Below, one piece after another: positions 24,501-63,487 of a stretch of DNA of 64,000 bases. The position numbers and the translations under genes were made by a program. The stretch lies in assembly GCA_963924565.1 (NCBI GenBank), contig OZ004612.1, positions 12,400,001 to 12,464,000 on the forward strand, given 5' to 3'. Origin of the DNA: Ascidiella aspersa. Its lineage: Eukaryota. How positions within the stretch are numbered: the first letter of the stretch is position 1; every line of letters starts with the position of its first letter. The notes under the pieces are model-generated. The model ran no database searches, was not told the origin of the DNA, and worked only from the letters and a program-made list of their open reading frames with translations.

Positions 24501-27500
24501 CAAACTAAAAGGTGTTTTAACTTACATAAAGTGGATCTAATCGCTGGGCTTCTTCAAGTAGCTCTCGTTCATGCAAAGCCCGAAGCAGTAGTTCTTTTTC
24601 CAACTGAGGATCATGCTTGAGCTAGAACATTTTTGAGAATTGCATTACAACGTGTAGTGAAGTAGATCGACAGCATCTTGATTAAGACGTTTCGATACGA
24701 ACTTGTATCATCTTCAGTTAGTGTGACGTACAAGTTCGTATCGAAACGTCTTAATCAAGATGCTGTCGAGCTACTCGAGCTTTTTGGCTTTGAAATTTAT
24801 TATTAAGCTACATTACAGATCCGTGCATAGTGTACCCAAACGTGTAGTGAAATTATCAATTACACTTGAAATAAAAAGTTCTAAAAATGCGCTAAACGAA
24901 ATCTTTGATGACGGACCACTTATGTTACAAAATAGGTTTGTTAGTCCACGAAAAAATCAGTTGAAAATGTGATTTTTTGACAAAAAAAAAATACAATAGC
25001 TGCAATATTTTCAGTTAGTTTAAATTATTAACATATGTCAGGTAAATAAAAAATCGGTAAAGGTATCCGTATCACTTGACAAAAACATAAAATTCGAACA
25101 TCAGTAGCGGTCCAAAAAACATTTAAAAAAGGTGCACACATGAAAACCTACCAGATCTAACAAAACCTAATATTTTCAACAGCGTGTGGTAATATACTAC
25201 AAGAATTTTTTCATACAACAATAAATTAGAAAACTCAATACTTCGGCTCTCAGAACAATAAACATTATTATCATTGGCGCTGTTGCGATTACAACTTATC
25301 GACTCACATATTCCTGCAGCAAGATATCGTCCTTTATCCCGGCGTAATCCTGCAAAGTGTCAAGGCCAAGAAGATCCATGAGAGGGTCGCCAGTTCCAAC
25401 CTTGGGCTTTTCCAAAGCACCAGGAGCCTTTGTAGCATTTGCCAGGGCGGGGTCCAGTCCGAGGCGCTGCAACAACGCCGCTTCTATTGCTTCCTTGTCC
25501 AGGGTTTGTTGGTCCTTTGCTGGAGGCTGATCCTTACTTCCACCTGGAGCTTGTTGGTCCGGTTGATTCTTATCAGCACCCTCTGCTATTGGCAAGTTAG
25601 CTGGCAGCTCACCGCTTTAAAATAAATTTCAGCTTTTTTTCTAATCTTCTCTTAATTGTATTTAAATATCACAAGTGAAGGTTGACTTGTTATTACGTTA
25701 TTTTCAATGCAATCAATAAACTTTGTTAAAAAAAATACTACAGAATTGAACGCTACAAATCCAATCACTTTAGGTCAGTGCTTCCGAACGGATGGCTCGC
25801 GATCTATTTCAGGTGGGTCGTAAAGCTATTTCAGGTGGGTCGCAAGGCATTTCTAAATGTTACAGATTTCTATTTGATCAGGAAATTATTGCATTATCAT
25901 TACGTAAAATAAATATGTACAATTAGAAGTGGTGTGTCGCATAACTATTTCAGTCTGTACGCCAGAAGTAAAGATGCAGGTTTTATGTAACTGTTAATCT
26001 TAGTTCCAATCAGTTCCATTTTAAATTATTGCTAAACAGGGGTTAATGTAATTTATTTGAACTCTCTAATTTTGTTGGATTCTTTTTATAGTCACAAAAT
26101 GGATATTTTTGAGCTTTATCATTCATTTGTTTTTTATTCGTTTGGTCCAATACTGGTAGCTCATTGTGGGTCACACAATAAACTTGCATTAAAAGTGGGT
26201 CGCGAACTGAACAAGGTTGGGAAGCACTGCTTTAGGTTACTTGATTTAAATTAAATACAATTGCTTTTTGATTTGGCAATACCTGGCACGAGTTTGTTTG
26301 ACTATTTTGACAGCAGACAGTATGTTCTTTAGATCGAGACTACTGAGCGATTTTGCCTTCTCCAAAACAGCACTTGTGGTAACCGATGCAGGCGACTTGT
26401 CAGCAGAAGTGATTGGCTTGGCCGAAGAATCACTCACTTCAAAAGAAAAATTGTGAAGATAAATAAATAAATAAACGTTTTGCAGAAAATTAAGCTCACT
26501 GTTATAAAAACATCATGTAGTTAGCTATCACAATGGTACATCTTTAATGTTGTGAATCGGTGGTTTGTTTTATGGCCATAAAGAGCTTAATACAATAAAC
26601 AAAATAATACATATAAGACTATTTTTAGACTTTGTTTCTTATTGCAGAACCTGTGACATGTTTTTCACACAATTCAGGACCCCTGCAGTTAAATTGTGGA
26701 AACAGAGGCAATTTTTTTATCAGGCCAGTTTAAATTCAGCGACAGGAACTGAATATTGACAGAAATTATTGGTAAACCTATATTTATTAGCCTATCTTTA
26801 TACTTTTAACCCAGTTTTATGCCGCTATTAAGCTCCTGTTGATTTTGACTTTTGTTTTATATTAAATGTACACTGTTGAATTTGTTTGGTCAAGATCGAT
26901 CCCATCAATTTTTGCAGTGTAAAGTCTTTTTAACAATTTCAGAAGCTTCAAAAGTGTGATAGTATTTAATTATATAACTAATCCTTTTTTGTGATTAATA
27001 CTTTGTGTCTAGCCTAGTTATTGTTAAGGTGAAACATTTAAATCTAACTGAGAATACTGGTATGTATGTGAGTGACTAAGAAACATGGTTTTATTGATTT
27101 ATGCCAATGTACATTATTAATGTGGCTCTTTTGAGTTCAAATTAAAAAATGTGGTTCTTGGTCTCTTACTGGTTGTTCACAACTATTTATGCCTTTGTAC
27201 TTTAGGTTATGCAAGTATATATCTTTATTGTTGGTAAGTCTATACATATATATATATATATATATATACTTATGCGTTTATCACAATAATCTACCTTTTG
27301 GTTGCTTGATAGCTTGTAGGTGTTCCTGAAGCTTCTTTAAATTGTCACCCTTAAAGAGTGGATTGTTTTGTAAAACTTCAGTCAAATTGGGTTTGCCAAA
27401 CCCAATCCCTTGTTCTCTTCCAAGTGATGGACGATCTGGCACAGATGGGCCTGCACTTCTTTCCCTGTCTCCTGAAGACACGGAGCTGCTCCGATCCAGA

Positions 27501-30500
27501 CTATGCCGATTACTCTGTAAAAACCTCGATCGCTGAAATTGTTCTGGAGCTTTAGACTGTTCATCTAAATGCGGCTGGGAATCCTGGGTTAACATCTCAT
27601 TGTCAAAATTGTCAGACGGAGCATCTTCGGGGTCATAAACACATATATTGTCAGGCATGTTGTCATGTTGATGATGGGGAACTGGAGCTCTGAAGCGTGG
27701 GTGCTGCCCCCTAAAGCGGGGTGGTGCACCTCTTGGATGGTGACCCCTGATTAATCGTTGCCCAAAGGGCCCTGGGTGTCTTGGATGGGGTCTGTTACCT
27801 GACTGAACACTTGGATACTCTTCTTCCCCTTCTTGATCCATCTCATCATAATGTTCTTCATTTGTAGGCCGAGGTCCTCGAAATCTTGGATAGGGACCTC
27901 TGGGCCTAAAAGGCATCCTGCCACGATGTTGCATCCCAGCACCAGGAAATCGTGGGCGAACATTAGGGGCAGGCAGTCTTGGCCTTGATTCAACTTCAAA
28001 TTCGGCTTCACCAAAGTCCTCCTCATCCTTTGTAAAGTCCACATCTTCGTCTCCTTCCTGTTCCTTCACTTTTAAATCGTTGTCAGTGTTGCTAGGCTCT
28101 CTCTGTTGGGCTTGAAACTGTGGCCTTTGGTGACTCTGCTGTACAGGCATTCTCGGGAATCTTGGATTGGGAAAAGGTTGATTGGGGTTGCGAAATCTGT
28201 GATTGATTTCCTGTTGTCCATGATTGCCTGGCAATTGGCCCGATTCATCTTGCCCAAAACCTGACTTATTTTGGTTGACATTTTCGCCATCCAATTCAGA
28301 ATGTTGCTCCTGTTGCCCATGAAATCGTTGCCGCATGCCGTGTTGACTAGAGAACGGCTGCTCATGTTGACCTTGAAACCGCTGACCTTGATGTGGTCCA
28401 GGAAATCTCTGCCGTTGACCATTTTGCCCTGGAAACCTTTGACGCTGGCCATTTGCACCTGGGAACCGCTGCCTTTCGTTATTTGAACCAGAAAATCTTT
28501 GTCCGTGATTATTATGGCCTGTAAATCTTTGTCCCTCGTCGTGTTGGCCTGGGAATCTTTGCCTTTGATTATTTTGATCAGGAAATCTTTGCTCCTGGAC
28601 ATTTTGGCCTCCTGGAAATCTTTGATCTTGTTCATTTTGACTTGGGAACATATGTCCATCTTTGTTTTGACCCCGACCTGTAAATCTGTTTTCTTGATCA
28701 TTTTGACCTTCCAAGCTTTTTATCTGATCATTTTGACCTGAAAATGTTTGTCCTGAGTTTAGGTTGGGAAATCGTTGTCTAGGGTTGTTTTCGCCTGAAA
28801 ATCTTTGTCCTGAGTTGTTGTGGCCCGGGAATCTGTGTCCCGGCTGTTGATCCTGTTGGGCTAGTGAATGCTGCCCTTGGTGTTGCTGTTGGCCAGAAAA
28901 GTCGTGTTGCTGACCTGCCAGCATTTCATGAGGAAACCTAGGACGTCCTTGGTAATTACTGTTGGCATTTTTCTGGGCGAAATCATTTGTCATGCCTGTC
29001 TGTTGGCCTTGGAAGTTTCCTTTATTGTGAAAATCCTGTGGTCCAGATCCAAGGTTCACCTGCCCAGCCATCCTCATGCCACCAGGCATATTTGCTTGTA
29101 GGTTACTTTGATGCTGAAATGAATTTTCAGAAACGTTGGGCCTCATTTGGGCTTGCATGTGGCCCTGGAACTGGGGGTTTGGTGGCCTGACTTTTGCATT
29201 TGCAATATGCTGCTGGATCTTTCGGATGTTGTTTTGCAGACGCTCAACGTTGGTCCGGTTTTGGGTTTTCATGTTCATCATCTGGTCTTGCCATGTTACC
29301 CACTGATGACAAAAACAATTAAATATATATTTATTTATTATATTTTGTTATAAATTTTATAAAACTTAGTTTTACATCAGATTTTTACAGTGCTTTGAGA
29401 GAAATTGTTTTTTAAAACAAAACATTGTCTCCAAACAAGCAAATAAGCCAAACTTGTAAGAACTTAAATATAATATTCTGGTTTAAATAAGAAAAAACAA
29501 CAAAATGTTTTTTTTTATTAACAATTACTGGCCCTTGCAACAAAATTTAAATGTTTTTTAGCCAGATTGTATCCTGTACACAATTATATCCCCCCACAAA
29601 AACTACCAGACCAACAGTAGCAATTTAACTAAGTTTTCATGGGAACACAATAGCAATGTGATAAGGATACCTGTTTTTCATATTGTGAAAACTGAGACTT
29701 GTTTGGATGGTTTTGATGCTTTCTCTTCCAATCGTCGAACTGCTTGTGCCAGTCATTGTACTGCTTTTCAAACACCTAAAATAAAAAGTTGATAACTTAA
29801 AAATATGAAAGCACAAATAATTAAGGCTGTCATTTGTGACTTATCTGTTTAAATTGTTAACTCTAGTGTAATTTGTATATGACTTGACTAACTTTTCAAT
29901 AAAAACAACACAGCCAGAATTTATGCAGAACGAAGACATTATAGAATGTGTAGTTTCATCATTAAACTTTGGAACTATTTATCAAGAACTTTATTTCTAA
30001 AATTTAGGACGAAACAAAAATATTAAGCAACTTAAAAAAATTACCAGAAGGCAATCAATTTTTTAAAAGTGAACAATACGATATATCTTCGAGTTGTGTT
30101 TTTTAACAGAAACTATGTATACATGAACTACTGTAAGTTAACCGTTTGCCATTTTTACCTTCTCTTGTTGTGTAAGTTTGAGAAGTTGCTGTTGATTTTG
30201 AGCGAGGTTTATAGCGGGATCTTCATTACTATTGGGGTTCCACTAAAATTAAGTAAAATATTATTAGTGAATGTAAAAAAAAAAAAAAAACAGTTGCATT
30301 TCATTAAATATATATGAAATGCATTCCCAATCACCACACACCTAGATAAACATTAAATGGAAATATACATTTATTTATATTTTACAGCTTGGACAGATGG
30401 AATCACCCACAAAGAGCATGTTTCAAACTAATTAACATTTAAAAAAAAAATCATTTTCCACAAAATCAAATGCAGGAACAAACTAGCAGTAATTTCAATT

Positions 30501-33500
30501 ATTATTATAAATTATAGATTTAATGCATTGACGACTTGTCATACAATAAATCAAATAACCCAAATAGTTATAACAAATGCTTGGTAATGTACGCACATAT
30601 TGATTTCAGCTGTGATAGCTTCAGCCATAATATAGTAATTTATTATAGTAATTTGGTCATTTGATTATTGTTGAGCAACTTTAAAGGTTGGAGTTCTAAC
30701 CAATAATTGTCAATAATTAAAATCAATAGTTTTAGCAGATCAATGATTTAAGACTGGTAGAAGGTCAGGTTAAAACAACTACTTTGTTAATGTACATGTC
30801 AATTGATGCAATGCATGTGAATTACCACTCAAAATGTGATCATATTGATGTTTTAATTTCTGTGGTAGCATTTCCCCCCAAAATAAGTTTCTGTCACAAT
30901 CTGTTATAAACAAAATTACCTCTTGGACGTTAAGTGCAGGAGTAGACATCCCTGGTACAGATGGTGTAACTTGACTGTTAGTTGTATTTCCAGCACTGCT
31001 TGATGTCGCTTGAGAGTCTGGCTCCTTTTTAATATTTCCAAATGTAGGCTCGGCCTTTATAATCACTTGTGGCTCCTTTTTTATAGTAGTTGTGGTCTCT
31101 TTAAACAGAATACACTAGGCTTCAGCACAAAAGAAAAAACACTGCCTTGATAAAGAAAACGACTAGTGGCAGTCCTTATAAAACATTGTTAGGATACCGG
31201 CAAAATTTAAGATAGTTGTTTTTTCAACCACTGTTAACAACTAAACAATGTAGCTAACTGATTTTTAAAGTTTAATGGCAACGATGAACCTTCAATTGTA
31301 ACAGCGGAATATCTCGAAAACATCAATAGCTAAATTTAAAATAAATATTTGGACCTTGCATCTAGGAAGCAACTTAAATGGATAATTTACAAACAAACTG
31401 AATTTATTGCAACTAAATGTGAATCCTTTCATGATGTGGATAACTTCAGTTAGGCTACCAAATGGATCATACAACCTGGTGTTAACAATCAAATTTTATC
31501 ACCCTAAATTTTGATTATAACAACCCCTTCGATTATAACAACCTAGTGTTGTTTAAAAAATAAGTGGCTAAATCGTGGAAAAATATATTACCAAATTTTG
31601 ATGTTGTATGAGACCGAAGTTTACTCTTAGATGTCTAACTTCAACCATCATTTCATATGTTCTTACCAGTTTTATGTTGTTTTGACACCAATTGCAACTT
31701 ATGTTGCCAGCATTCAATTTGTTGTTCTTTTTTTAGGGCAACAAACCACTTTTCCTTGGTCAGTCTTTCTAGCTTGGCCTTGTCGGGAGCATTGAGTTTG
31801 CTCAGAGCTTCCACCCACCACTATTGACAATAATAAAAATTCATATTTAGTTAAAATGTCATTTGGCATGGTACTGGCAAGTAATGTCTTGCTGTTATAT
31901 TTAGTAGCACTGTTGGATGTCTAAAAAGATAAGACAGACTAATAGATAGTATCCATTTAAAGTTTATAAAACAATGTTTTGGGGTTAGGGGGCACTCTGG
32001 CCGCCGAAATCAAAGGCATAAACCTGATAATACATTTGGGAGGAATGGTGCCTTTGATCATAAATGATGCACCACTTTTACATTTTCAGCAGACCAGTAA
32101 ATAATTTTAAACACCTGATAGCTTTCCTACCCGAAGCCGTTTTTTTAATATACATATACTTTAAAGCCTGGATACAGTGTTTAGAACTTTTTTCATGAAA
32201 TTGCTTTCTTAGAAAAAAATCATAGATTGAATTATATTATATGAAAACAACCTTGGGCGTTTTTAACTTGTTTTGTGTAAGGAGTAAAATCAATCTCACA
32301 AAAATCTAAAAAAATTGCTTTTCAAATAAAATATATATTTGAAGTTTGTTTTGCACAAATTTCTTTGGCTTTCTGGCTGATTTCTCATCCAATATGGCCG
32401 CCAAGTTGCCAGCATTGTGTCAAAATGATTGTGATGATAATATGAAGTATAAAAGCCTTTTTAATTACAAACTACAGAAAACAACTGATTGAGAAGTGTA
32501 TGTTAAGAGTCTTAAGACTAATTGTATTCATACATATAATGTTTTACCTTTTCTTCTTCGGGAAGCGGTGGTGCTGGGGGAGTGGGGTTGTCATCACTTG
32601 GGGGAGGCGGAGGGGGGACAGGGGCTGGTGGAGGCGGCTGCTTGGGTGGGGCAGTATCCGGTGGTGGAGGCACCATGCCCTGAAATTCAAATATGTCCAT
32701 TAAAAATGTGGTAAGGCTCATTTCTGCTGCTAGTCTTATTGCTATACAGTTCTGAAACAGGTTTGCATTGTGGAAGAAGAGTTAAAATAAAAATAAAGTA
32801 GAATCTAGAAAAATATCTTTTTGAAGTGAAGATTTTAGCCAACACAAACTGATATCTGTGGGTAAGGATTAGATTGGAACTATAGAATTTGCGCGGGATA
32901 GCTAATTTTGCAGCGTGAAATTGCGCGGCTGTAATAACAATTTGGCCCAAATTTGTGCGGCTGTAATAACGTTATTTGTAAAATTTGTCAGGCTGAAAAT
33001 GGAGTACTATACTGAAAATCATTACCACAACGTAAGTTTTGCACGTTTGAGCGTTTTTTTTTTGCGGCTGATCGCATTTTACGATGATTTTGGCCGAGGG
33101 CAGAACTGTGGGATATGAATGGTTAATACACAAGCAAACTCAGTAAATGTCTTATTTGTTTTACCAATACATTTATCAAAAATGCAGACGAGAAACATGC
33201 TATATGAACACAAAAGTTATTCACCTGCTGTTGATAAGCACCCATCATATGCTGCTGGTACATTGCATGTTGCTGTTGATGGGGCATATATTGCTGCGAC
33301 TGTCCGTATATATGTTGCTGCTGGTTCATCATGCCGCCACTGATTGCTGGATGTCTGCTGTGTTGTTTCTGCTGGCCGACACCCATGTTGCTATAATCAC
33401 TGCCACCAGCACCCGCCATGTTCTGCTGCTGGCTCATTTCTGACATGTTGTACCCAGCATGTTGTTGGTAGTTTCCTTGCATCCAATCTTCAGTGCCTTG

Positions 33501-33572: not shown

Positions 33573-34201
33573 TTTGTCAATGTTGTTGTTGTCAGTCACT
33601 GCATTAACCGGGTCGGGTATGTTTCATGCCAAACATAGCAAAACCCTTTATTCCTGCAGTCACTCTAGATTAATTAATACAATTATTCAATTAAATGAAC
33701 AAAAAGAAACTTGCAACCATAAGGTGTGAAATATGGGCACATTTTAAAATGCCTATAAAGTGTGCATACTTTTTTTTAGAACGTGCACACTTTTTCAAAC
33801 CCAATAGAGTAAAATTAATGGTTTGTACTAACTGCCACGAAATCACTTGACAAAATCAGCAGCTATTTACTACTGTGAAAAATAGTACATCACAAGTGTT
33901 TTTCAACACAACCCATTTTTAACCAAATGTTAAACCAAGAGAGCAAAACTATAGTCAGGCTACAGTTTTCGATAATAATTCCTTTACTATCGTGCAAGTT
34001 TATCTAATAAAATGCAATACAGCAGGGAAAATGTTAATCTTTCACTCTGATACAGCCGAACAATTTTAGTCTACAAAAACTTTTATTTTAAATTAATGCA
34101 CAGTATTTGGGTGTGGGTGGTCTTGCACCCAAACCCAAATGATGTTACCAATATAAATCCCCCGACGAAAATGTGGTAGGATTCTACACCAGCGCCTTTT
34201 C

Positions 34202-36549: not shown

Positions 36550-36572
36550 CACACACACACACACACACACAC
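36550..36572. repeat. (CA)n microsatellite in probable p190 3' UTR
   Basis: Direct reading; a second shorter tract lies near 36447-36459. Confidence 0.9.
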
Positions 36573-36807
36573 GAGCACCTTCGTTATTGCTAAACATTCA
36601 ACCGAAAAAGAAAGCGCGAAAACTCGCGAAACAGCGCGAACGTACTTCGCCGCCGTTTTTACGAAAAGGTACAGAAAAGCGCGGGCGCCTCACAAATCCG
36701 CCCCGCTGCTGTGAGGCAGCGCACTTCGTACCCTGTTGAAACATCTGAAAGACGCGGCCGAAATAAAGAGATATTCAAACTAACAAAACAAGAAGGCTGC
36801 CGAGTGA

Positions 36808-51800: not shown

Positions 51801-54800
51801 ATATGTTGTATTTAAAAAAAAAAATAGTATATATAACATAATAAGTAAATATTTTTGCAAGCATTTACTGTTTTACCATAAACAAAAAAAGCCTCCTATA
51901 GTTATTAAATATGCAATAATTAAACACATTCTTTAAACAAAGGCTAGTCAAAACATTTCATTAGTAGGGTTTAATTATTCTGCAAAGAGATAAAGGTATA
52001 AAAAATTAAAAAGTTCTTAAACAGTAGCTTCTTGACATGCATGTCTATAAATTCTTACATAGCAAAAAATGTTTATCATTTGATCTCCAAAGTCTATCCT
52101 AAAAATGAAACTCACCTCATTGTCGAGAAGACCTGCAGTTGGACTTGTCCTGGGGGTTTCAGGCCTGTATTCATCGCTGCCAGCTGGAATCGAATACATC
52201 ATCATTACATCACTAGCCTTCATACTAAAGCCCTTTAGGTTTCAACCATAACAGGGATAGACAGAAGGCAATATTTAAATTGCGTTGCCATTTGGACCTT
52301 TATCAACTATGCCTATGAATAATTAGATATAGGCAAAGTTCAACAGTTAACAGTCTAATAAATAGGTGTTTTTAGTTCTAGTTTCAGGAAGTACAGCTTC
52401 AACTGTACTTCGCTCTTACAATTAAGTTAAAAAATATGATTATTGAATAACACTAGATAGTATCTTTGAAGATGGTCAAACTCAATATTGAAAAGGTCAG
52501 GCCATTGAGAATTTAACATAGATTGTACATAGATAGTAAACATGTTTCACTGCATTTTCTATATTTCAGCTCACTTTAAAAAAACTTTAAACATGGTTGT
52601 TTCAGAGCACTAGATAAACAATAAATAGTATCGTTGAAGATGGTCAAACTCAATATAAAAAAGGTCAGTCCATTGAAAATTTAACATAGATTGTACATAG
52701 ATAGTAAACATGTTTCACTGCATTTTCTATACTTCACCTCACTTAAAAGAACTTTCAACATATTTGTTTCAGAGCACTAGCTATCTACTCCTGCTTGAAA
52801 AATAAATGGGTGCTTCTGTCCCAGACTTTAGTCTTTAAAGAAAACTAGACACTTGAAAATGTAGGAGAGAACAGGGCACTTTTCAGCCGATTTGTTTAAG
52901 CTATTCTTGATGACTCAGTTCAGGAGAAGATAGCTAAACACTGCTGCCCAAACGTTGGCAGACTATTTCAGTACTCACAGCTATGGAATTCAGAAGATCC
53001 ACACACATTAATATGACATGTGAAGCAACACTTCCATTAAAAAAAGTTACAAATGTCCTAATTTGTGTCCTAACACAAATCAAGCAGTAACTTTCGATAA
53101 CAGTATTTTACCATTAGACAAACAACTAAACGAAACTAATTGCAAAAAGGAAAATGTCTGGCTGAGAATATCAACATAAAGGTAGGACTGTAAGTTACAG
53201 CCAGATTCAATATTGTCACACACAAGAATACACAATGGAAAACAAGTTTCACAATTCTCTAATACGGGATTTGTATGAAGGTATTTCACTGCTTAGTTTA
53301 ATTGATGTTTCGAAATATTATTTTTAAATCCAGTGAGAAAACGATTTGGGGTCTATTCAAAATTAAAAAAAAATATTAAAGAAATAATTGTATGTTCAGA
53401 AATCATGCGATGAGCAAAGAAATTTTTTTATCTTACATGAACAAGTGAAGTACATTACCTTCTTACATCTATAGTGTATAATCAATAATCATAGTAAAAT
53501 ACATAGCTAAGTTTCACTTTTCAACAGCTCAAAAAGCATCAGAATGAACGACAACTTAATAACTGTCTCCCTCTAACATATAAGTCCTAAGCAATAGGCA
53601 TAACTTAGACAAATTTTAGAAATTATAAAGATCAAGCAGTGGCTGTCCAGGTTTTTAATGCTAGGTACAAAAAAAATATTAAACATACAATCCCATTTCA
53701 GAAACAATACTAACTAAATTTGCATCTTTAATACTTACTTGACCATGTTGAGGCTGGTGTGGCGTGCCCAGTTTCTGACTGGCTCTCAACGTAACTGCTC
53801 TGCGAAGATACATTAAACCTGAGCGTGCTTGGTGGCGTTACAATGACACTGTTGTTGTTGTCCGGCCGCGGAACCTCGTACATGGCCTTGGCCGGCAGGT
53901 TCTCTGCGCTTCCCGTCTGTGCAAATAAAAGCCAGGGTTTTCCAATGTATGTGACATGGTTTCATCTGACTTTCCGGTTAATTATTAGCATGTGAGGTAA
54001 TACTGAAACACCATGCTTATGATCTTCCAGTTTGAAGTGTTTGCTTTTCATGTGATGTATGTTGACTTGGAAAGCCCACAGAAATTTGTCGGTGGTATAT
54101 ATGGTAACTTATGTAACTTTATATCATTCCATTCGAATAAATAAAGACTAAACAATAAATAGCTTTTATTACAACATTCCTTGGAGATATTTGGTTTGTA
54201 CTATTATGCTACCTAATTTGTCTTTATTACAGCATTTGTTTCCACAGTGAATTGAAACTCATAAAAAGAAAAAAATTGTTAGCAAAACATTAACAACATG
54301 TTCTACATGTTAATAAATTGTACTGGTGTCACTCCAGTTATTATATTTCAGTAAACTTTCATTGTTCGTCAATTTCAAAATACTAACACTAAAACATTTC
54401 AGTAGCTACAGTCTACATTTAAGATCTCAAAATGGAATAGATATTGTAGTCTTACCTTTGCCTCACTTGCTCTTGATAAGGCAGAAGTCCTGGGAGCAGG
54501 AACTGGGGGAACTGCTTCATCTATTCCATCTGTTTCAGGTTCCTCTTCTAATATGATTTGGCTGAATCTAGCAGAAATAAATATTAGACCAGAGTCAGAG
54601 TCATTATTAGAGCAGGGTTTTAAGGTAAGTGTTCAATAGTAATTTATAGAGTTTCATAATTTATATATTAAAACCAAGGCCAAAGCATGCATGTAAATGT
54701 TACATTGGGATTATACATACATGAACATCAGTTTTAAAATTAATATAATGGATAACAAATTCACTTTGTAGGCTTGAATATAAACGTAACTTTACTGACA

Positions 54801-57800
54801 TGTAAAAAGAAGATATGACAGAAAACTGTTACGTGTGTAAATACTGTTGAGAAAATTATTTTAGTTATCATAATTTGTTTTTGTATGATTTTCTGTGCAG
54901 TTTAGGTAGATACAGTGTTATGACTTCAGTCGTTTTGATAAAATGATTTGAATCAAGTCTTGTGGACAAATGACTTAGGTTGAAAATTTACTGTAAAATT
55001 AAGATATTTATCTTAAGTTTTGCACATAAAACGATTAGATTGCAACCAATTATATTGTTCATATTCAGACAAGTTTACCAGTTTCAATACTTTATTATTC
55101 TGTTATAATATCAGTTATTGACTTAGAGATGACTTGCTCGAATAGCAATATGACTTGACTGAGACTTGACTTGGCAACTAATGACTTGGGCTGGGACTTT
55201 TAGTATGACATATCATTTTAAAGATGTAAAAAAAAAGCTTTCTAAAAATCCTTACTCGTGAATTGACTCTGTGTTCTCCTTGTGCTCCCATGCGTCTTTG
55301 AAGAAAGTGCTGTAGACCTCTGCCTGGTGGCGATGACGTGATGAGGCACTCACAAACTTAGCGCTTAGCTCGTCGGCCAGGGCGTTGCCGGCGACTACAA
55401 GCCTTCGTGCACCTCCATCTTGTTGAAAGAAGGCAGTGGCCGGGGGTCGGTCCTCATTTGGCGAAACGCAGAGAATTAGCAGGGGATAGGCACTGGCTGT
55501 GTGGTTGGCAAAAACCTTGGAAGAGAATAAGTTCATTAAGTTGGTTAATTTCTCCTCTATCACAGTGAGACCAAAAGCATGGCTTTTAAAAATAGATGAA
55601 ATGATTTTTACCAACAAAAAGAACTGAATTAATTTAACAATTTAGTACAGATGTCCGATTCTTTGACATTTTATACGATACTGAGAGGCAATTTTTATCA
55701 GTAAACTATCACAATTTAATCAGATACCAAATGATGTAAGCAAATTACATTTTTCAAAAGTATTTGTTTGGGGATATAAGGCCAAAATTTGCCGCAGCGT
55801 TAAGGGATTTAGTTATCCCCAGTTGTTTATCTACTATGGTTTGATATATTACCTAAATCATAGAATACTCCCTATATTAATTTAGTATTGGATTGGCACT
55901 TATACCACACTAGTATCGGTAAAATACATGTTTAACCATTTGACATTAGGTATCAACTCCCTATTATATACCCAATAAAATTATATACCTAATACATATT
56001 AATTTAGTAAGAGTAAAGATAAATTAGCTTAGAAAAATAAGTATAAAATTACATAAAAACATATTTAGCTAACTTCAAAAATCAAGAAAAATACAAACAG
56101 TAAGATACTGACCTTCATTATTGAAAAGGAGCTATTGCGCAGATTGTCGTACACCAGCATGAACCCATGCACGGGAGTTCCCTTGCTCATAAGGTGTCGT
56201 GCCGACTGGTAAGAGGTCACAGTGACGGCGATCCTGCGTCGCTGGGTGCCAAGGTACGTAACGACGACCAGGGTGTCTTCGGTTGCCTCATCCTCTTCAA
56301 CAATGATGCCCGAGTCGTAAAAAGACGAGTGATTGAGTAATGGGGCGAGAGCCACCTCGGCAGTCAGATTGTCATCTGGAATTAGAGGAGCAATAAAATG
56401 TTAAACCGTAAAAAATTGATAACAAAACAACTTTTATGATGGAACACACACAAGCTTTGTACAAATTATTAGTAAATATCCATAAATCACTCAAAAGGAG
56501 ATTACAGTGCATTAAGCTAGCGCGGAATTTAAACTTATTTCAGGCTGAGCGGGATTAAAAGTCAAACAAAATTCAACATGCAGCGAAAAAAAAAATTTAT
56601 CCACAAAATTTTGCCTGATGACAGCCTTGTTGTAACTATTAGAACTGGCTCTTCTGATAAAGATTGTTATTATAAGGTACAACTTCTACAATAAACTCAA
56701 CTAAATAGCGTTTTGCTTAAGTTTTAATGTGCCCTTAAGTCTATTTCCCCTGGCTGGGATTTATGTAACTTCTTTTTATTCAGCTTTCAATTAAACAATT
56801 TTGCCTTGTTATAAAAATGAAGGTAAATAGATGTGCAATATTGCCTGGCAAGAACGGAAAAATTTGGCATAACCTCTACAACACTTAACTTATTTTGGGG
56901 AATAAGAACAAATAATTCCAAATACATAAAAAATCATCTCTTCTGACTGGGAACATCTTAATGCAATACCATAGCGATGAACTCACCGTGTCTTGTGCAC
57001 ATTACAATGCGAAGGTCAGGAGGTCCTTGCATTGGATCCAAACCAAGGCCTCCAGGGGCCTGTTCCGCATCGGCATAGCTGTTTCGACCGCTTCCAGCTC
57101 TTTCCTTGATCCCTTCAACCAGAGACTTCATCGCCATGCGGATTTGCGAGTCATGGAAACGGCGGTTGTAAGCGTACTCGGGTCCGAGTACATCAATAAA
57201 TGGACATCCGATTCTGGAGGCTAACCTCTCGCCAGCATCACGCAACTGGTGAGCCTAAGTAGAAAATAATATTTTACATCAACTTAACAATTACGGTGAA
57301 TTAACAGTTAAAAACTTAACAAATGTATTAATTATTTTCGATAATGTTAAATACTGCACAATACATTGTAACAATTAAAGCATAACCAAAGACTTCAAAT
57401 ATAAAGTATTAGCAATATGTACTTTAAAATATAGCGAAATATATTTGTGTGTTTTGTCTTTTTTAAGTTGCAGGTATGCCTTTACCAATATATTAAACTG
57501 CTGTTGTATTTTTTTACTTACATCCTTTTCTTTATCAGAGTAGCAAGCCAACAAAATAGAAATAGGAAGACCCTGAAACGGTGGCACCTCATTTGATTCA
57601 GGAGCAGCAACTACAAGTTTTTCTAAACTTCGCTCAATGTACCTACAAAAACAGTTCAAGTTAATGTTTAGGTCAGTGGTCGGCAAACTTTTTTGTCACG
57701 TTTTTTTTTGTCAAAGGATTCTTTTCAGAGCTATTGAAGGCCCGCTATGTACAACCAGTACGAAAACAGTGGCGGATTCAGGATATTTGTATAACACGGC

Positions 57801-60800
57801 ACCTTGATGGCCAAAACACCGACACACCATAATGTATGACATACTATAAAACGAAGAAGATAGGCGCGAAGCGCAAACAATTTTGCGTTTATATAATTAA
57901 AGTTGGCAAAAAATATAGTTCGACAGGTAGGCTAATCAGGACCACATTTGGCACGTGGGTCTGAACCACACTGAGACAATATAAAAGTTCTGAAACAACA
58001 TATAATTTTAAAACAAAGTGCAATGAATGTACATTGAACGGCTATCACGCAGACCACAACTACATGTTAACACTAAGTTATTCAAAAGTAACTCGCGACC
58101 CCTAAAAATGGCTCTGTGGCTCACATTTGGGCTGCGGCCCACAGTTTGCCGACCACTGGTTTAGGTTAAGGAATTAGGGATAGTTGTGAATAGATCACAG
58201 GTTATTTAGACAAGATTCTGAACGTTTAGGTATTCCTGATTTAGGCTTTTAAGATTATTAGGAGGCTATTAGGTTGTGTGATATTGAGGTTATTCTAATT
58301 TCAGTCTTATTGCTTGAAGTCTATTTTCCAATCTATGAAAAACGTATTGTAATCTCAAACCTCAGCGATTCCATAGATGAATAAACTGCGATGCACCCGT
58401 GTGGTGAGAAAGATGAAATTTGAAAAGTGTTAGCTGGCAGAGTGACGTCGCCGTCAATAATACGCAATCGAGGTCCGTGAATATATCCGTCTAAAGTGTA
58501 CTCATCATCTGAGGTACGAACCTGTGTCAGAATCAAAAGAGATGTTATCTTTAATTGTCAATGATTAGATTTTCTGGCTGATACAACATTGTTTTACAAT
58601 AGTTGTAATAAAATTAAAAAAACAAGGGTAATGTAAGGGTTGTCCTGATTTTATTTGTGGAGCAGTGAATCTATAAACGGTTAAAAATAGTTCATTTGAA
58701 ATGCACAAGCTAAAATTCGTTGTCAAGTATACAAAACAACCAAAGTAACTTTTTAAACAAATATCAGAGGTTACTTCAACAAAAAGTCATTACTGTTTAA
58801 AACCCGGATGGTAATATATATAAAAAGTAGTGGTGTACCTGTAGTAAGGTAAAAAAGAGTGTTGTAACTAAAGTAAGAGTAATTGCAGATTAAACTTATC
58901 AAAGAAAAACAGATCTAATGACCGTAATTTCATTAGCAAGGTCATTTGATAGTCCATCAGCACCGAGTACAACAATGTTCAAAGTGTCAGAATCAGGTTT
59001 GAGCTGCCAGCGAAGACCGGGAGCAAATGGCTTGCCACTCTCGTCTTGGCAGCAGGGCTTGGCAACCCGGTGAGCGGCAACTGCTTTGGCAAGACACTTG
59101 GCACCCCAGTTGTCGGTCGGTGGATACCGTGCCTCAGTCACATGGCGTGTAAGAATGTCGTCTCGTTCTTTTTGCAGTCTCGCCATAGCTATGTATCTGG
59201 AGTATTGAAACAATTTTTTTTTACACAGGTCACTTCAATGCATTTTGTTGGTGCAAGTCAAAATATCAGACATTGGTGTAACTAATTTCAGCTATAACCT
59301 TACTTTATTGTAATTGTTTGATTTAAATAATTTCATATATAAAACCACCAATTCAAAACTATTCATATGTTCAACTGATATATTCTCAGTATATTGAGTG
59401 CATACCACACTCAATTTACAGCTAAACAGGTCATGTCAAGAAACTCACAGGCTTAAAAAATTCCTATATACAGTAGATAACTTACCTGGAATCATTCTTC
59501 AGAGCATCGTTAATTCCCATAAGGGTATTATCAACATTTGGGGCAAATATCTCAGATTTTTCGTATAACAGTTCTTGAAAATCCTCCTTTGCCTTTTCAA
59601 CGATTTCAGCCTAAGCAAAGCCAGGGAATTTAACCAGCAGAAAATAAACTTATACAGGAGAAAATTCAAACAGAAGAAAATAAACTTAAAAAAGGTTTGG
59701 AGTAAATATTGCAAACAATAGTATCAATTTAACGCTTACTTGAAACTGTTCGTAAATTGTTGACAGTTCCGATTCAGTAATCTCAGAAAGAAACTCGTAT
59801 TGCTTGAAAAACTTGAACACGTCTCCCCATTCTCGCCCTGGAGTCACCTATATGTGTCACAAAAATATTCAGAGATACTCAAGCAGCCGCTTTATTTAGA
59901 AAAAATGCCTATAGTAAACTAATTAGAATGGATCAACACTTGTACAGATGTCATTGGGACTAGAGCAGAGACTTTAAATGCTATTCAGGGCTTCATTTAA
60001 CATTTATTTTTGACACATATATCCAATACAAATAGAAAAATGTAATTGTCCTATACAAGAACTATATATATGTAGTAATATTTGAATTATATATAAGATG
60101 CAAAATCAATACAGTTATTAATAACAAAGAAGGCTTAATAATAACATTTATCTTGCTTCTTCATAAATAAAAAAAAGTCAGAATGTAGAAAACATTTTTA
60201 TCAAAGAAACATTTCAAAATGTTGTTGTAATGTTTTACATTCTTGGGAGTGTAACAAAAAAAATGCAATTATGAAAGACAACATTTGACCTTTCAACAAG
60301 TTCAACTTAAAATATCAAAAAAAAAAAAATAACTTGCATCAAAAAAAAAAAACAAGGAACAAAAAATGTAAACAAAAATGAAATTTGAAAATAACTGAAA
60401 GTGAAACTCTTCTTGGACTTACCTTCAACCTTCAAAAACATATAACGAATGAATGAAATCGCTGCAATTCGCTGCTGACATTGTAAAGAGCAAATTATAT
60501 TTCATTTTCTTTAGTGTAAATTTCTATCCAATCCAAATGTAATGATGTTTAGCGTTTGTCACAAATACCATATTACGCAAAAAATACTTTTTCAGAAGTT
60601 AAACTTTTTGTCCCCAGCTATTCAATTTAAGTGGTTAATATTGAAGTTTTAATATCTCTAGATTTGATAACACAAAGTTCAAGTTAGCACACACACACTT
60701 GCAACTGTCAGTTACAACAATCAAAATGCCGCTTTGATTGCACATAGAATTGGCTCTTAACATAATGATTGCAAAGCAAACGCAAAAAGCTAATCAGTAA

Positions 60801-63487
60801 ATTCAGCAGTATAAAGGTATCAATAACATGGTTTTCTATTAAAATATTTTTTATTGATAAACTTATGTTAAAGTTTATGTTGGTAACAAAATTGACTTAC
60901 AGAGGTATGTTTCTTATACTATACTCTCATAACACTATGCAACATTTTTGGCTAAACTTTTGACCATCCAATCAGATACTAAGTATCTTTTTACTCAGTT
61001 AAATAATACCTGATCACAGCTATAGGTTCTAATCTAATACTTCTAATGAAGTATATTGGCATTGCGAGTATCATGCAGGAATTAAAGCTCTGAACAACAC
61101 TTTGATAATTTTTTTAACTACTGACGAAATTGAACATGGAAAAGAATCGGTGAGTAATGATTTGTAAAAGTGTAGCATGTGTTTTGCATTTCAGTTCTAT
61201 CAAAGGTAGGTGTTTCAATGCTTTAAATGCCTGTGCCAAAATGAATGTGTGCTTAAAATGCAGTATATACTTAACACAGTCTAAACTGCAGATCTAAACA
61301 TTGTAGCGAAATAAGTACACACCTGTTGCGACTCCATTAACAATTCCTTGAACTGTGTTTTCAGTTCAAAGCGCCGCTGCTTGGCCTCCAGCTCCATCCG
61401 GTGGTTCTGGAAAATCAATTCGGCCTCTGCAGTTTGCAGAAGCTCAAAGGGAATCCTACGATCCTCCATTGACTTCATGTGCTCAGATTCATACCAGGGT
61501 GGATTGTGGTCTTTTCTCTCCAGCATTATTATCCAACTAAAAGCAAAATGGCTCGTTATGGTTTCAACAATTTGCTAATACAGTAATATTAATACCATGT
61601 CTTATTGGAAGGAATAAAAAAACTTTTATAAAGTTACACAAGGTAATGGTAAATTTTGTTTTATCGTTGAGAAGCTGTGTTGCAGTAAAATAAATGTAAC
61701 TGGCAAACTTGGTATGTTTTTGAATTTTACCCTGTACTCTGTATTTCAACTAATAACGTGCGTCTGGTGGTCTATATTATCTCACCTAATTACAAAAAGG
61801 CATAACATTTCTATGCAGTAGTGCAAGCGGAATGTTAAAACTGATTTCAGAGACAGCCAGACATAAATGCCAATAATTAAACATTTCTAATGAGTAAATA
61901 TTCAACCAATATATACATAATTGATTTTTCAACAGAGGTAAAGTCGTTAAAATAAATTTACCATTTCCATGTGTCACTGAAATCACCGGAGGACAAAAAT
62001 AGACAGAAAAAACACTAGCTGTCATATTTTGCCCCCAGGGCAAGGTGTCATAAAATAAAGATGTAACAGCAACGATAATAAGAACATTATCACTGTATAC
62101 CACACTTCTCACTGTTATGGAATAGAAACATTCAAACAAAACTTAATGCATGCAATGCAACCTGTGGAGTGATTGCAAAACATAAAAAAGCACAGCGATT
62201 AAAAAAGAGGGCTAATAGTCAGAAAAATGCAAACAGAACATAACTAACTAATCTGTCAAACAATTTAGCCACTTTGTAAACCTGTTTTTATTGTTTTGTA
62301 TATTAAAAAAATAAACTAACATAAGTTTAATGGTGAAAATAACGACCCAAATAGACGTAAAAAGCGACGTGCTTTATTGTTCAAACGTTTCGGCAAATGC
62401 TCATGCCATCATCAGTGATTAAACAATAAAGCATGTCGCTTTTTACGTCTATTTGGGCCATTATTTTCACCATTAAACTTATGAACAGATCTGTATAAAA
62501 ATAGTGTTCCAAACTGACATACTTTTTAAACTTTGGACTTTCAGTCATGATTGTGCGGGTTTCATTCCATGTAGGTCTTATGCATCGAGCATCAGGCAGA
62601 ATAATTTTTAGTGCTCTTGGAAGGTAGCGAAGGTATTCGCCTTGCAGTTTTAGGCGGTATTCATCTTTCAGCCGAATGACATGCTTGCGGAAAATCTTTG
62701 AAGCTGCATTTGTGCCTGCATCGCCAAAAAACTCAATTTTAGGTGTTGAACTAGAAACAGTATGTCTACCAACTGCTTAAATTTAACAAAAAAAATAATT
62801 CATACTGTCAAGTTTTTGTAAGGTTTGGAATCACTGTTATGATTAACTTTTCTGTTTGAGATCAACTTTTCATCATACAATCCTACCTTCCAGCTCAATA
62901 TATCGGATATACTGTGGCTCATCTTCAAGAGTTTTGCGAGCCACCTGCCAAGACTCTTTGTAATTGGCCACTTTGTTTTCAAGAAGCTTCTCCAGCTGCT
63001 CTTTGGCGTCCTTAAGAATGTCTCTCCTAACCAGGGCAGCATCCTCGAATGATATAATCTAGTTGGGTTGAAAAGAAAAACAAATGAAGAGAAATAATAG
63101 TTAACATTCATATATTCATTTTATTGTATATATTTTTTAGAGCACATGTTTTCCAGCAAATAAGGAAGTTGCAGCCCCAATTTGATTAAGGCAATTAAAT
63201 GCAAGACACAGCAAAATTCAGTTCACTAAGCAAACCTTTGATTTGGACCGAGTTGTCTTGTCAATTAGCTGGGCAAGATAGAGGAATGCAAGGGTGACAT
63301 TAATATTCTCTGATGCAGAGGTTTCAATGACAGCAAGTCCACTGCCCTTCTTTCCAACAGCAGTTGCCGCAAACTTCTCCACTTCATGTATAAAAGCGGG
63401 AACTGCTTCATCGCATTTCGTCAGGGCAACGACGATTGGTTTTTTGGTCTTGGCAATGTAATGGTAGCAGTTTTGCACGAATTTTAC
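36808..63487 (-). CDS. ARHGAP35: p190 Rho GTPase-activating protein (ARHGAP35/ARHGAP5-like), 5'-partial, 24 exons in window
   Basis: Exons (minus): 63487-63236, 63058-62887, 62715-62523, 61536-61323, 59847-59740, 59610-59486, 59196-58923, 58521-58361, 57642-57522, 57254-56987, 56375-56113, 55515-55256, 54567-54456, 53916-53739, 52183-52116, 51679-51530, 50887-50676, 50258-50039, 49701-49552, 46518-46332, 44378-44301, 40395-40258, 39543-39438, 36991-36808. N-terminal GTPase motifs ([22 protein letters not shown]), FF domains ([18 protein letters not shown]), pseudoGTPase segments, RhoGAP domain ([44 protein letters not shown]). Cannot be assigned to A or B paralogue. Confidence 0.92.
43132..43660. 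repeat. Diverged tandem duplication (about 320-bp period) in p190 intron
   Basis: TAGATTTGCCAGCCGCTGAAAAATAT..TGTAGTAAAA..AAGGGTTGTTTG..ATTATAAAGCAGTGA..AAAAAACAATTGT occurs at about 43132 and 43451. Confidence 0.8.
52458..52780. repeat. Tandem duplication (about 168-bp period) in p190 intron
   Basis: TAGTATC.TTGAAGATGGTCAAACTCAATAT..AATTTAACATAGATTGTACATAGATAGTAAACATGTTTCACTGCATTTTCTATA..TTGTTTCAGAGCACTAG twice. Confidence 0.85.
57674..58158. mobile_element. hAT (Charlie/Buster-type) MITE in p190 intron
   Basis: Perfect 16-bp TIR CAGTGGTCGGCAAACT / AGTTTGCCGACCACTG, perfect 8-bp TSD GTTTAGGT (57666-57673, 58159-58166). Confidence 0.9.
62324..62510 (+). mobile_element. Foldback mini-retroelement (Penelope/retrozyme-like) in p190 RhoGAP intron
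   Basis: 11-bp direct repeat AAACTAACATA (62313-62323) / AAACTGACATA (62511-62521); 62-bp inverted arms 62320-62381 / 62422-62483 (3 mismatches); hammerhead core in the 40-nt loop; 3' tail ACAGATCTGTATAAAAATAGTGTTCC. Confidence 0.8.
62381..62418 (-). ncRNA. Minimal type I hammerhead ribozyme core (HHR-2)
   Basis: Minus strand reads UCA-CUGAUGA-U-GGCA-UGAGCAUU-UGCC-GAAAC-GUU^UGA: conserved core, 4-bp helix II, palindromic AACGUU helix III, NUH site GUU, 3-bp helix I. Confidence 0.75.

What the first reader, a model, noticed from the sequence alone, without database searches (positions are those of the whole stretch)
24649..62521. A family of hammerhead-ribozyme foldback mini-retroelements in introns of two neighbouring genes
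Seen: two insertions 38 kb apart (24662-24838 and 62324-62510) share one architecture: TSD (13 and 11 bp, both starting AAC/AAAC), an inverted segment carrying CUGA(A/U)GA-U-helixII-GAAAC-GUH, a direct segment duplicating it, 88 vs 91 nt from the predicted cleavage site to the 3' end, and a common terminus ACAGATCyGT..ATAGTGTwCC. Their middles and helix II differ in sequence while helix II pairing is kept (GAUAC/GUAUC vs GGCA/UGCC). Known: minimal type I hammerheads with a palindromic helix III and an extra base before G10.1 occur in Penelope-like element pseudo-LTRs and retrozymes, and PLE insertions often carry inverted 5' ends. Inference: these are two divergent subfamilies of non-coding ribozyme-carrying retroelements mobilised in trans. 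In both the ribozyme lies on the host sense strand, so it is transcribed inside the pre-mRNA.
Basis: partly seen in the sequence, partly recalled or inferred. Interest (0 to 1): 0.9.

Follow-up and report, generated by a model that had tools for sequence, protein, structure and literature searches.

The report
Penelope-type hammerhead retroelement copies in introns
The two "foldback" repeats are real, dead copies of abundant short retroelements that carry the minimal hammerhead ribozyme motif and insert the way Penelope-like retrotransposons do. This kind was described in 2014, and nothing here shows that they cut the host genes' RNA.

Summary
Both insertions sit at the stated coordinates with target-site duplications. 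Each has one complete minimal hammerhead motif on the minus strand. They share a 22-nt 3' box that occurs 875 times in the genome.

The reading is largely right: these are multi-copy retroelement families, with at least 2501 (F1) and 694 (F2) first-look candidates.

Three corrections:
- The foldback is not the element's own design. It is the known Penelope-like-element (PLE) insertion signature: an inverted, truncated second arm, a tail on one side only, and variable duplications of 6-14 bp. The genome's own RT/GIY-YIG elements show the same tail-outward pairs.
- Family 1 is not a mini-element. Its copies are truncations of a unit of at least 331 nt. Family 2 has a 136-nt unit among the copies I could read.
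- A third family shares the hammerhead, the 86-87 nt spacing and the 3' box.

No PLE coding sequence adjoins any copy, and the mobilising element was not identified.

Both copies lie in introns on the host sense strand. One is 40 nt from a confirmed 3' splice site. The other is 12 nt from a predicted 5' splice site. No RNA ends mark the cleavage sites.

This scan reached the same verdict on other windows of this genome. I rate it a new member of a known kind, of modest interest.

The parts
24649..24661 (.). Left copy of the 13-bp target-site duplication of element 1
   Evidence: Exact direct repeat with 24839-24851.
24662..24727 (-). Element 1, inverted tail-less arm. It matches family-1 unit positions 206-269 on the minus strand.
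   Evidence: BLAST against the long natural copy L087:1193-1523 gives 90% identity. It is the inverted-repeat arm with 24729-24775.
24686..24717 (-). Complete minimal hammerhead motif of element 1. The predicted cut lies between 24686 and 24685 on the minus strand.
   Evidence: Descriptor hit and direct reading of the sequence. The direct arm on the plus strand lacks the CUGANGA box.
24729..24838 (+). Element 1, direct arm with the full 3' end (unit positions 223-331, ending ...GCATAGTGTACCCA)
   Evidence: BLAST gives 94% identity. The 3' box matches the 875-hit pattern.
24839..24851 (.). Right copy of the target-site duplication of element 1
24525..24621 (-). Host exon immediately downstream (in transcript sense) of element 1. 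The acceptor AG is at 24623-24622, 40 nt from the element.
   Evidence: Spliced contig X3 record 18 joins 25308-25614 to 24525-24621. Donor GTGAGT and acceptor TTCTAG were read directly.
62313..62323 (.). Left copy of the 11-bp target-site duplication of element 2 (one mismatch)
   Evidence: Direct reading. The last 4 nt also pair with the element.
62324..62423 (-). Element 2, inverted tail-less arm (family-2 unit positions 10-113), including the centre
   Evidence: BLAST against the natural 136-nt copy L083:1387-1522 gives 92% identity.
62384..62415 (-). Complete minimal hammerhead motif of element 2. The predicted cut lies between 62384 and 62383 on the minus strand.
   Evidence: Descriptor hit and direct reading.
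62425..62510 (+). Element 2, direct arm with the 3' tail (unit positions 55-136)
   Evidence: BLAST gives 92% identity. The 3' box carries a 4-nt insertion.
62511..62521 (.). Right copy of the target-site duplication of element 2. It overlaps intron positions +2 to +12 of the host gene.
   Evidence: Direct reading. The predicted donor GTATGT is at 62522-62517 on the minus strand.
62525..62776 (-). Open frame holding the host exon with the C-terminal part of the p190RhoGAP FF1 domain, upstream (in transcript sense) of element 2. The Pfam match lies at about 62633-62734. The 5' edge of the exon was not determined, and the 3' edge at 62523 is predicted only.
   Evidence: Pfam PF16512 positions 47-80, E 2.6e-7. 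The neighbouring exons match FF1 and the ARHGAP35 GTPase domain.

Best explanation
What they are. Both sequences are inactive copies of short non-coding retroelements that carry the minimal, PLE-type hammerhead. They were inserted by target-primed reverse transcription by a Penelope-like-element RT/GIY-YIG enzyme.

How the insertion forms (inferred from anatomy plus published biochemistry). Both strands of the staggered target cut prime cDNA synthesis on element RNA.
- One cDNA starts at the main start site (...GTGTACCC or ...GTGTTCC, usually followed by AA).
- The other starts about 21-35 nt further in.
- Both run toward the RNA 5' end, stop at variable points, and are joined head to head.

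This gives a tail-outward inverted repeat with a variable centre, a 'tail' on one side only and a 6-14 bp duplication.

Shown here: copy number, anatomy, shared 3' box, conserved hammerhead core with compensated helix II, intron location and strand, and sense-biased family transcripts.

Inferred: the enzyme, priming on both strands, and that the source elements are non-autonomous.

The hammerhead belongs to the element's own RNA biology, whose role is unknown even for PLEs. In these solitary truncated copies it is most likely inert, because the motif has no helix III and needs a second copy to fold.
For: Copy number and shared box:
- First-look candidates number 2501 (F1) and 694 (F2), at 84-97% identity.
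- The shared 3' box has 875 exact hits and 0 in the control.

Insertion anatomy:
- The 3' end is sharp, the centres vary, and the inverted arms are truncated.
- The outer end of the inverted arm clusters 24-35 nt (F1) or 21-29 nt (F2) short of the 3' end.
- Exact duplications of 6-14 bp occur in 26 of 49 F1 and 31 of 38 F2 copies. AA follows the 3' end in 37 of 49 and 28 of 38.
- Genomic copies carry templated 3' extensions of 6-13 nt or more (AAGTAT...) before the duplication.

Transcripts:
- 60 of 84 loose-end RNA reads listed at the F1 3' boundary continue into that same extension. Only 7 genomic copies match it exactly.

PLEs in this genome:
- There are at least 668 PLE ORF candidates, and RT plus GIY-YIG domains were confirmed by Pfam.
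- Their ORFs form the same tail-outward inverted pairs and tandems.
- Their 3' UTRs carry their own minimal hammerheads.

Hammerhead motif:
- The descriptor gives 2 hits in the window against 0.02 expected, and 58 hits in 287 kb of loci against 0 reversed.
- The core is invariant and helix II is compensated across F1, F2 and F3.

Literature:
- The min-HHR architecture, with thousands of mostly solitary copies and pairs on opposite strands, is in PMC4209133.
- Inverted 5'-truncated copies and a one-sided 30-40 bp tail are in PMC8557442.
- A PLE protein that cleaves and extends both strands and starts reverse transcription internally is in PMC11167929.
Against: - No autonomous PLE with this 3' box was found. 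The tails of the two PLE families I could read share only the hammerhead core with F1 and F2.
- Self-cleavage is untested. No RNA read ends pile up at the predicted sites, though depth was low.
- Rfam hammerhead models do not match, even at E up to 10.
- The hammerhead fold is not the thermodynamic optimum for F1.
- No tandem (pseudo-LTR) arrangement of F1 or F2 was seen among the 86 loci in hand.
- The full length of F1 is only bounded from below, at 331 nt.
Confidence: 0.8

Rival explanations
1. They are simply 5'-truncated tails of an autonomous Penelope-like element that I did not sample, not separate non-autonomous families.
For: - F1 shows a continuum of 5' truncation, and its upper length is only bounded at 331 nt or more.
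- The 2014 paper attributes most solitary min-HHRs to truncated PLEs.
- Only 55 of 668 PLE ORF candidates were scored.
Against: - No PLE ORF fragment lies within 1.5 kb of any of 86 loci or anywhere in the window.
- None of the 40 longest F1 copies lies near any of 59 PLE ORF matches.
- None of about 100 exact termini on contig 1 lies within 2 kb of a GIY-YIG or ORF hit.
- Three of three F2 copies that reach the 5' leader end at the same nucleotide, each with a different flank or junction.
Confidence: 0.13
2. They are MITE or foldback DNA transposons whose hammerhead-like motif is incidental.
For: - They form long inverted repeats flanked by duplications.
- Rfam sees only hairpin or miRNA-like matches.
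Against: - The arms are asymmetric, with one sharp end and one variable end.
- Duplication length varies from 6 to 14 bp.
- Plain direct copies without any inverted arm exist, for example L081 and L083.
- Some copies carry templated 3' extensions.
- A genuine hAT-type MITE in the next intron shows the contrasting anatomy: symmetric terminal repeats and an 8-bp duplication.
Confidence: 0.02
3. The sense-strand hammerheads are co-opted host elements that cut or regulate the pre-mRNAs of the two genes.
For: - Both complete motifs are on the host sense strand.
- They lie 40 nt from a 3' splice site and 12 nt from a predicted 5' splice site.
Against: - Two same-strand insertions are expected by chance one time in four.
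- Each copy has a single motif without helix III, so a monomer cannot form the active fold (PMC4209133).
- The intron holding element 1 is spliced normally in the transcript contig.
- No read ends occur at the predicted sites.
- The copies are ordinary decaying family members. Their arms differ by 2% and 6%.
Confidence: 0.03

Closest known systems
Minimal hammerhead ribozymes (min-HHR) of Penelope-like elements (Cervera and de la Pena 2014, PMC4209133)
   Same: - The CUGANGA and GAAA cores are present.
- There is an unpaired base at the 5' end of stem II.
- Helix I is short.
- There is no helix III hairpin, only a palindrome (ACGU) that could pair in a dimer.
- Thousands of mostly solitary copies fall into consensus families, with frequent pairs on opposite strands 100-700 bp apart.
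   Different: - Helix II here is 4-5 bp, not the 7-8 bp reported for Schistosoma.
- These particular families and their shared 22-nt 3' box were not matched to any described element.
- Cleavage was not tested.
Penelope-like element insertion architecture (Craig et al. 2021, PMC8557442; Frangieh et al. 2024, PMC11167929)
   Same: - Copies are 5'-truncated.
- An inverted truncated copy abuts the 5' end.
- A tail extension of about 20-40 nt is present on one side only.
- Reverse transcription starts internally on a longer RNA.
- Both target strands serve as primers.
- The genome's own RT/GIY-YIG copies show the same inverted pairs.
   Different: - The copies carry no ORF.
- No pseudo-LTR tandem was seen for these families.
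- The 3' end is not shared with the two autonomous families I could read.
Animal (non-LTR) retrozymes (Cervera and de la Pena 2020; Li et al. 2026 preprint, 10.64898/2026.07.22.740005)
   Same: They are short, non-coding, carry a type I hammerhead, and are proposed to be non-autonomous PLE derivatives.
   Different: - Retrozymes are defined by tandem repeats and circular RNA. These copies are dispersed, single or head-to-head.
- No back-joined RNA reads were seen.
- The preprint reports exclusion from introns in vertebrates, whereas these two copies are intronic.
Schistosoma Sm-alpha hammerhead SINE
   Same: It is an abundant short retroelement with a type I hammerhead.
   Different: - Sm-alpha has a tRNA-like pol III head and a canonical hammerhead with loops.
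- No tRNA or other Rfam head was found here.
- The motif here is the minimal type.

Membership tests
PLE-type minimal hammerhead (min-HHR) | Conserved core C3-U4-G5-A6-N7-G8-A9 ... G12-A13-A14, A15.1, U16.1-H17 | tested here: met
   Both window copies have the full core. The core columns are invariant across F1, F2 and F3.
PLE-type minimal hammerhead (min-HHR) | Helix II hairpin with an unpaired nucleotide at its 5' end | tested here: met
   A bulged U precedes GAUAC/GUAUC (F1) or GGCA/UGCC (F2). Two pairs are compensated between the families.
PLE-type minimal hammerhead (min-HHR) | No helix III hairpin; a short palindrome that allows a dimeric helix III | tested here: met
   GAA-ACGU-C/U in all three families.
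PLE-type minimal hammerhead (min-HHR) | Short helix I (4-5 bp) | tested here: inconclusive
   - The common F1 variant gives 5 bp (AUUAA/UUAAU), but window copy 1 gives only 3 bp plus a mismatch.
- F2 gives 3 bp, an internal loop and then 6 bp, but only when its 5' leader is present.
PLE-type minimal hammerhead (min-HHR) | Self-cleavage at H17 (as a dimer) | not testable with these tools
   No read-end pile-up was seen at low depth. Published min-HHRs cleave poorly in vitro.
Rfam hammerhead families (types I, II, III, HH9, HH10) | Match to a curated covariance model | tested here: not met
   There was no hit at gathering score or at E up to 10. This is expected, because those models include helix III.
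Penelope-like element insertions | Variable 5' truncation with a sharp 3' end and variable-length duplications | tested here: met
Penelope-like element insertions | Inverted 5'-truncated copy abutting the insertion, with the tail extension at one end only | tested here: met
   The inverted arm ends 21-35 nt short of the 3' end in both families. Tail-outward ORF pairs of the genome's own PLEs are seen.
Penelope-like element insertions | Partial tandems forming pseudo-LTRs | tested here: not met
   None was seen among the 86 F1/F2 loci. The apparent tandem in L065 is a second insertion with its own duplication. Tandems do exist for the coding PLE-A.
Penelope-like element insertions | RT plus GIY-YIG ORF in the element, or a 3' end shared with an element that has one | tested here: not met
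   No ORF fragment lies near any copy. The PLE-A and PLE-B tails share only the hammerhead core. The copies are therefore filed as PLE-type by insertion anatomy, not as proven PLE derivatives.
Non-LTR retrozymes | Tandem genomic repeats and circular RNA | tested here: not met
   The copies are dispersed. No RNA joints of any kind were listed on the element, although a truncated copy is a poor reference for circles.
MITE / foldback DNA transposon | Symmetric terminal inverted repeats and a fixed-length duplication | tested here: not met
   Contrast the hAT-like MITE at 25776-26229.
SINE with a pol III head | tRNA-, 5S- or 7SL-derived 5' head | tested here: not met
   ARAGORN found none in six loci. 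Rfam found nothing in the 331-nt F1 copy.

The most novel reading that the evidence does not exclude
The sense-strand minimal hammerheads, and the 47-65 bp hairpins that carry them, act on host pre-mRNA. They sit 12 nt inside a 5' splice site and 40 nt upstream of a 3' splice site. They might cut the intron when two copies pair, or modulate splicing.

A milder and likelier novelty is this. The module shared by three otherwise diverged families may define the cis-requirements for trans-mobilisation by a PLE enzyme. The module is a hammerhead, an 86-87 nt spacer and a 22-nt 3' box with a possible WACA/UGUW stem. On this reading a handful of 3'-extended source loci supply most transcripts.
Probability: 0.04. 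Interest if true: 0.7.

Novelty: new member of a known kind. Interest (0 to 1): 0.25.

Why it matters
It adds clean, well-delimited examples of how PLE-type elements insert: priming on both strands, internal initiation and a one-sided tail, seen in very short non-coding elements. It also points to a compact shared 3' box that may be what the enzyme recognises. It does not open a new class. For genome annotation it matters because these copies mimic miRNA hairpins and MITEs and sit right beside splice sites.

Tried and rejected
- Rfam. No hammerhead family matched at gathering score or at E up to 10. Only hairpin or miRNA-like noise matched.
- Autonomous partner. The 3' UTRs of PLE-A and PLE-B share only the hammerhead core with F1 and F2. 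A resemblance I saw by eye between the PLE-A 3' end and the extended F1 3' end did not beat shuffles: 926 of 2000 shuffles scored as well.
The F2 5' leader GATGTGGCCTTYAT has 156 genomic hits, and 118 of them are joined exactly to the F2 hammerhead. It is therefore part of the element, not a general leader.
- tRNA or pol III head: none found.
- Cleaved RNA as template. The 5' ends of the F2 tail arms scatter over unit positions 38-58. Only about 2 of 30 start exactly after GUU.
- Thermodynamic folding. Z-scores were -0.8 to -1.4, and the hammerhead fold is not the optimum for F1.
- Conserved structure in the 3' 87 nt. Only two weak 4-bp stems appeared. Three pairs were compensated, but these amount to one or two independent events.
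- Protein Atlas and PDB searches of two ORFs beside element 2 were uninformative.
- Empty-site allele. DNA contigs of two runs bridge both junctions of element 1, and no empty allele was seen.
- Fetching more loci. I did not try to read them another way.
- Host genes. They were searched exon by exon by reference.
Full report
OBSERVATION

Element 1 (24662-24838):
- It is flanked by an exact 13-bp duplication.
- It has 47-nt inverted arms that are 98% complementary.

Element 2 (62324-62510):
- It is flanked by an 11-bp duplication with one mismatch.
- It has 65-nt arms that are 94% complementary.
- Four bases (CATA) belong both to the duplication and to the inverted repeat, which is a microhomology.

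Each element holds one complete minimal hammerhead motif on the minus strand, at 24686-24717 and 62384-62415. My descriptor asked for CUGANGA, an optional bulge, a helix II of at least 4 bp, GAAA, a palindromic helix III and H17. It finds exactly these two in the 64-kb window. Block shuffles give 0.02 hits per window and the reversed sequence gives none.

Rfam's hammerhead models do not match, even at E up to 10. This is expected for a motif that lacks helix III.

COPY NUMBER AND FAMILIES

Both are multi-copy in the window's own 308.6-Mb genome.
- First-look candidates number 2501 for family 1 (F1) and 694 for family 2 (F2).
- The 40 candidates scored for each family are 84-97% identical to the window copies.
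- The shared terminus ACAGATCYGTNNATAGTGTWCC has 875 exact hits and none for the reversed pattern.

An alignment of natural copies shows that F1 and F2 are collinear from the hammerhead to the 3' end.
- The conserved blocks are the hammerhead core, a few short motifs and the 22-nt box.
- Helix II differs by two compensated pairs.
- A third family (F3, seen in L005 and L065) has the same core, a further helix II/loop variant and the same box.
- The distance from the predicted cut to the terminal CC is 86-87 nt in all three families.
- RNAalifold finds only two weak 4-bp stems in this region. One closes the 3' box (WACA...UGUW) with a compensated pair between families. This rests on one or two independent events.

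ANATOMY OF INSERTIONS

Alignments of 28 F1 copies and 30 F2 copies, plus a sample of 30 loci chosen only by the 3' box, show one pattern: [reverse complement of unit, truncated] [variable centre] [unit to its sharp 3' end].

- Centres. They differ from copy to copy, so the foldback is made anew at each insertion and is not inherited.
- Plain direct copies. Some copies have no inverted arm, for example L081 and L083. In the sample chosen only by the 3' box, BLAST finds an inverted arm in 8 of 21 F1 and 6 of 9 F2 copies. By eye several more F1 copies have short ones.
- One-sided tail. The outer end of the inverted arm clusters 24-35 nt (F1) or 21-29 nt (F2) short of the true 3' end.
- Duplications. 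Exact duplications of 6-14 bp were found in 26 of 49 F1 and 31 of 38 F2 insertions. AA follows the 3' end in 37 of 49 and 28 of 38.
- 3' extensions. Some F1 copies carry 6 to 13 or more extra templated bases (AAGTATATTGG...) between ...ACCC and the duplication.

F1 is not a mini-element. Copies extend upstream of the hammerhead (L085, L087, L074, L063, L073). At least 25 of the 40 best genomic matches cover nearly all of the 331-nt copy L087:1193-1523, so the unit is at least 331 nt. Window copy 1 is truncated on both arms. Its inverted arm ends 62 nt short of the 3' end, which is atypical.

F2 has a 136-nt unit starting GATGTGGCCTTYAT-ATCACUGAUGA.
- Three of three copies in hand that reach this leader stop at the same base, each with a different flank or junction.
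- The leader has 156 genomic hits, and 118 of them are joined exactly to the hammerhead.
- With the leader present, helix I becomes 3 bp, an internal loop and 6 bp.
- Head-to-head pairs of the leader 41-258 nt apart leave open whether longer F2 forms exist.

LINK TO PENELOPE-LIKE ELEMENTS

The genome encodes many PLEs.
- There are 62 GIY-YIG matches and at least 668 ORF candidates. One intact 816-aa ORF has RT and GIY-YIG domains.
- Their ORF copies form the same tail-outward inverted pairs, for example contig 1 at 15.301-15.305 Mb and contig 7 at 20.919-20.922 Mb. They also form a 3.4-kb tandem array.
- Their 3' UTRs carry their own minimal hammerhead, about 150 nt from the 3' end.

The literature describes each feature.
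- The min-HHR has a bulged base before stem II, a short helix I and no helix III. It occurs in thousands of mostly solitary copies, with pairs on opposite strands 100-700 bp apart (PMC4209133).
- PLE insertions show inverted 5'-truncated copies and a 30-40 bp tail at one end (PMC8557442).
- A purified PLE protein cleaves and extends both target strands and starts reverse transcription at two internal sites. Hammerhead cleavage is not needed in vitro (PMC11167929).
- A 2026 preprint argues that animal retrozymes are non-autonomous PLE derivatives.

I could not show the mobilising element.
- The tails of the two PLE families I could read share only the hammerhead core with F1 and F2.
- No PLE ORF fragment lies within 1.5 kb of any of 86 loci or anywhere in the window.
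- None of the 40 longest F1 copies lies near any of 59 ORF matches, and none of about 100 termini on contig 1 lies near a GIY-YIG or ORF match.
- This favours non-autonomous families but does not prove it.

HOST CONTEXT

Gene 1 is on the minus strand.
- A spliced contig (run X3) gives exons 27295-28299, 26283-26436, 25308-25614, 24525-24621, 23814-23894 and 23234-23719. Stranded RNA reads (X4) agree.
- The intron 25307-24622 has donor GTGAGT and acceptor TTCTAG.
- Element 1 lies in this intron, 40 nt upstream of the acceptor. The intron is spliced in the contig.

Gene 2 is a p190RhoGAP-like gene on the minus strand. It extends from beyond 63505 to below 55252. Its matches are:
- the ARHGAP35 GTPase domain at 63221-63505 (E 4e-21);
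- FF1 at 62876-63058 and within 62525-62776;
- the fourth FF domain at 59689-59847;
- pG1/pG2 at 58899-55252.

The FF1 exon most likely ends at 62523, with donor GTATGT at 62522-62517. On that reading element 2 begins 12 nt into the intron, and its duplication overlaps intron positions +2 to +12. This donor is predicted, not confirmed by reads.

Exons were searched one by one by reference. Whether the two genes are immediate neighbours was not established.

RNA

- Strand. On the tail part of F1, about three quarters of the reads come from the element's sense strand.
- 3' extension. Of the loose-end RNA reads listed at the 3' boundary, 60 of 84 continue into GTATATTGGTATCC.... Only 7 genomic copies carry that extension exactly. 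A small subset of copies therefore supplies much of the RNA, and that RNA extends past the usual cDNA start, as internal initiation predicts.
- Ends and joints. No place where many molecules begin or end was found, and no RNA joints were listed. Depth was low, and the reference is a truncated copy.
- Presence of the insertion. DNA contigs bridge both junctions of element 1, and no empty allele was seen.

VERDICT

- The foldback is an insertion by-product.
- F1 is a truncated copy of a longer unit.
- No action on host RNA is shown, and a single motif without helix III should not fold on its own.

The rival MITE reading fails on asymmetry, variable duplication length and the existence of plain direct copies. 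A real hAT-type MITE in the next intron (25776-26229, 8-bp duplication) shows the contrast.

This scan reached the same verdict for other windows of this genome. I tested the shared claims independently here. I rate this a new member of a known kind, with interest 0.25.

Noticed in passing
window 25776-26229: A hAT-like MITE sits in the intron next to element 1. It has 14-nt terminal inverted repeats (CAGTGCTTCCGAAC / GTTGGGAAGCACTG), an 8-bp duplication CTTTAGGT and internal 22-nt repeats. Its contig depth is up to about 200 times single-copy depth.
   Followed up: partly
L005:2604-2690(-), L005:2770-2880(+), L065:1900-2045(+): A third hammerhead family (F3) has helix II GGCAA/UUGCC or GGCA/UGCC and a different middle. 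It keeps the same 86-87 nt spacing and the same ACAGATCCGT...AGTGTTCC box.
   Followed up: partly
G000 contig 1: 9067756, 18598921; contig 3: 1114110, 21103238; contig 6: 21638936; contig 7: 27990283, 28290605: Only seven genomic F1 copies carry the exact 3' extension AAGTATATTGG, yet 60 of 84 loose-end RNA reads listed at the F1 3' boundary show it. These loci are candidate source copies. They could not be fetched, except the contig 6 copy, which is L010.
   Followed up: no
G000 contig 2: 30628713-30640542; contig 1: 15301472-15305490; contig 7: 20919010-20922268: A coding Penelope-like element occurs in a 3.4-kb tandem array and in tail-outward inverted ORF pairs. An intact 816-aa RT plus GIY-YIG ORF lies at contig 1: 40946940-40949387 (L091).
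   Followed up: partly
G000 contig 1: 37575544-37726134: Six F2 5' leaders on one strand are spaced about 20 kb apart, after a first gap of about 70 kb. This suggests a segmental tandem duplication that carries an F2 copy.
   Followed up: no
window 27281-29281 (-): A 666-aa open exon of host gene 1 has no Pfam match. The gene's identity is unknown.
   Followed up: no
L006:2114, L028:649, L046:2906, L058:517: Four more unrelated minimal hammerhead motifs turned up by chance in the flanks of fetched loci, with helix II GCCA/UGGC, GGCGAUUU/AGGUUGCC, GACGU/AUGUC and GCCU/AGGC. With the F3-type copies in L005 and L065, that is about one per 45 kb of flank.
   Followed up: no
L061:2400-2540(-): A diverged F1 copy has G10.1-C11.1 replaced by A-U (AAUAC/GUAUU). 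This is a compensated change at the base of helix II in a single copy.
   Followed up: no
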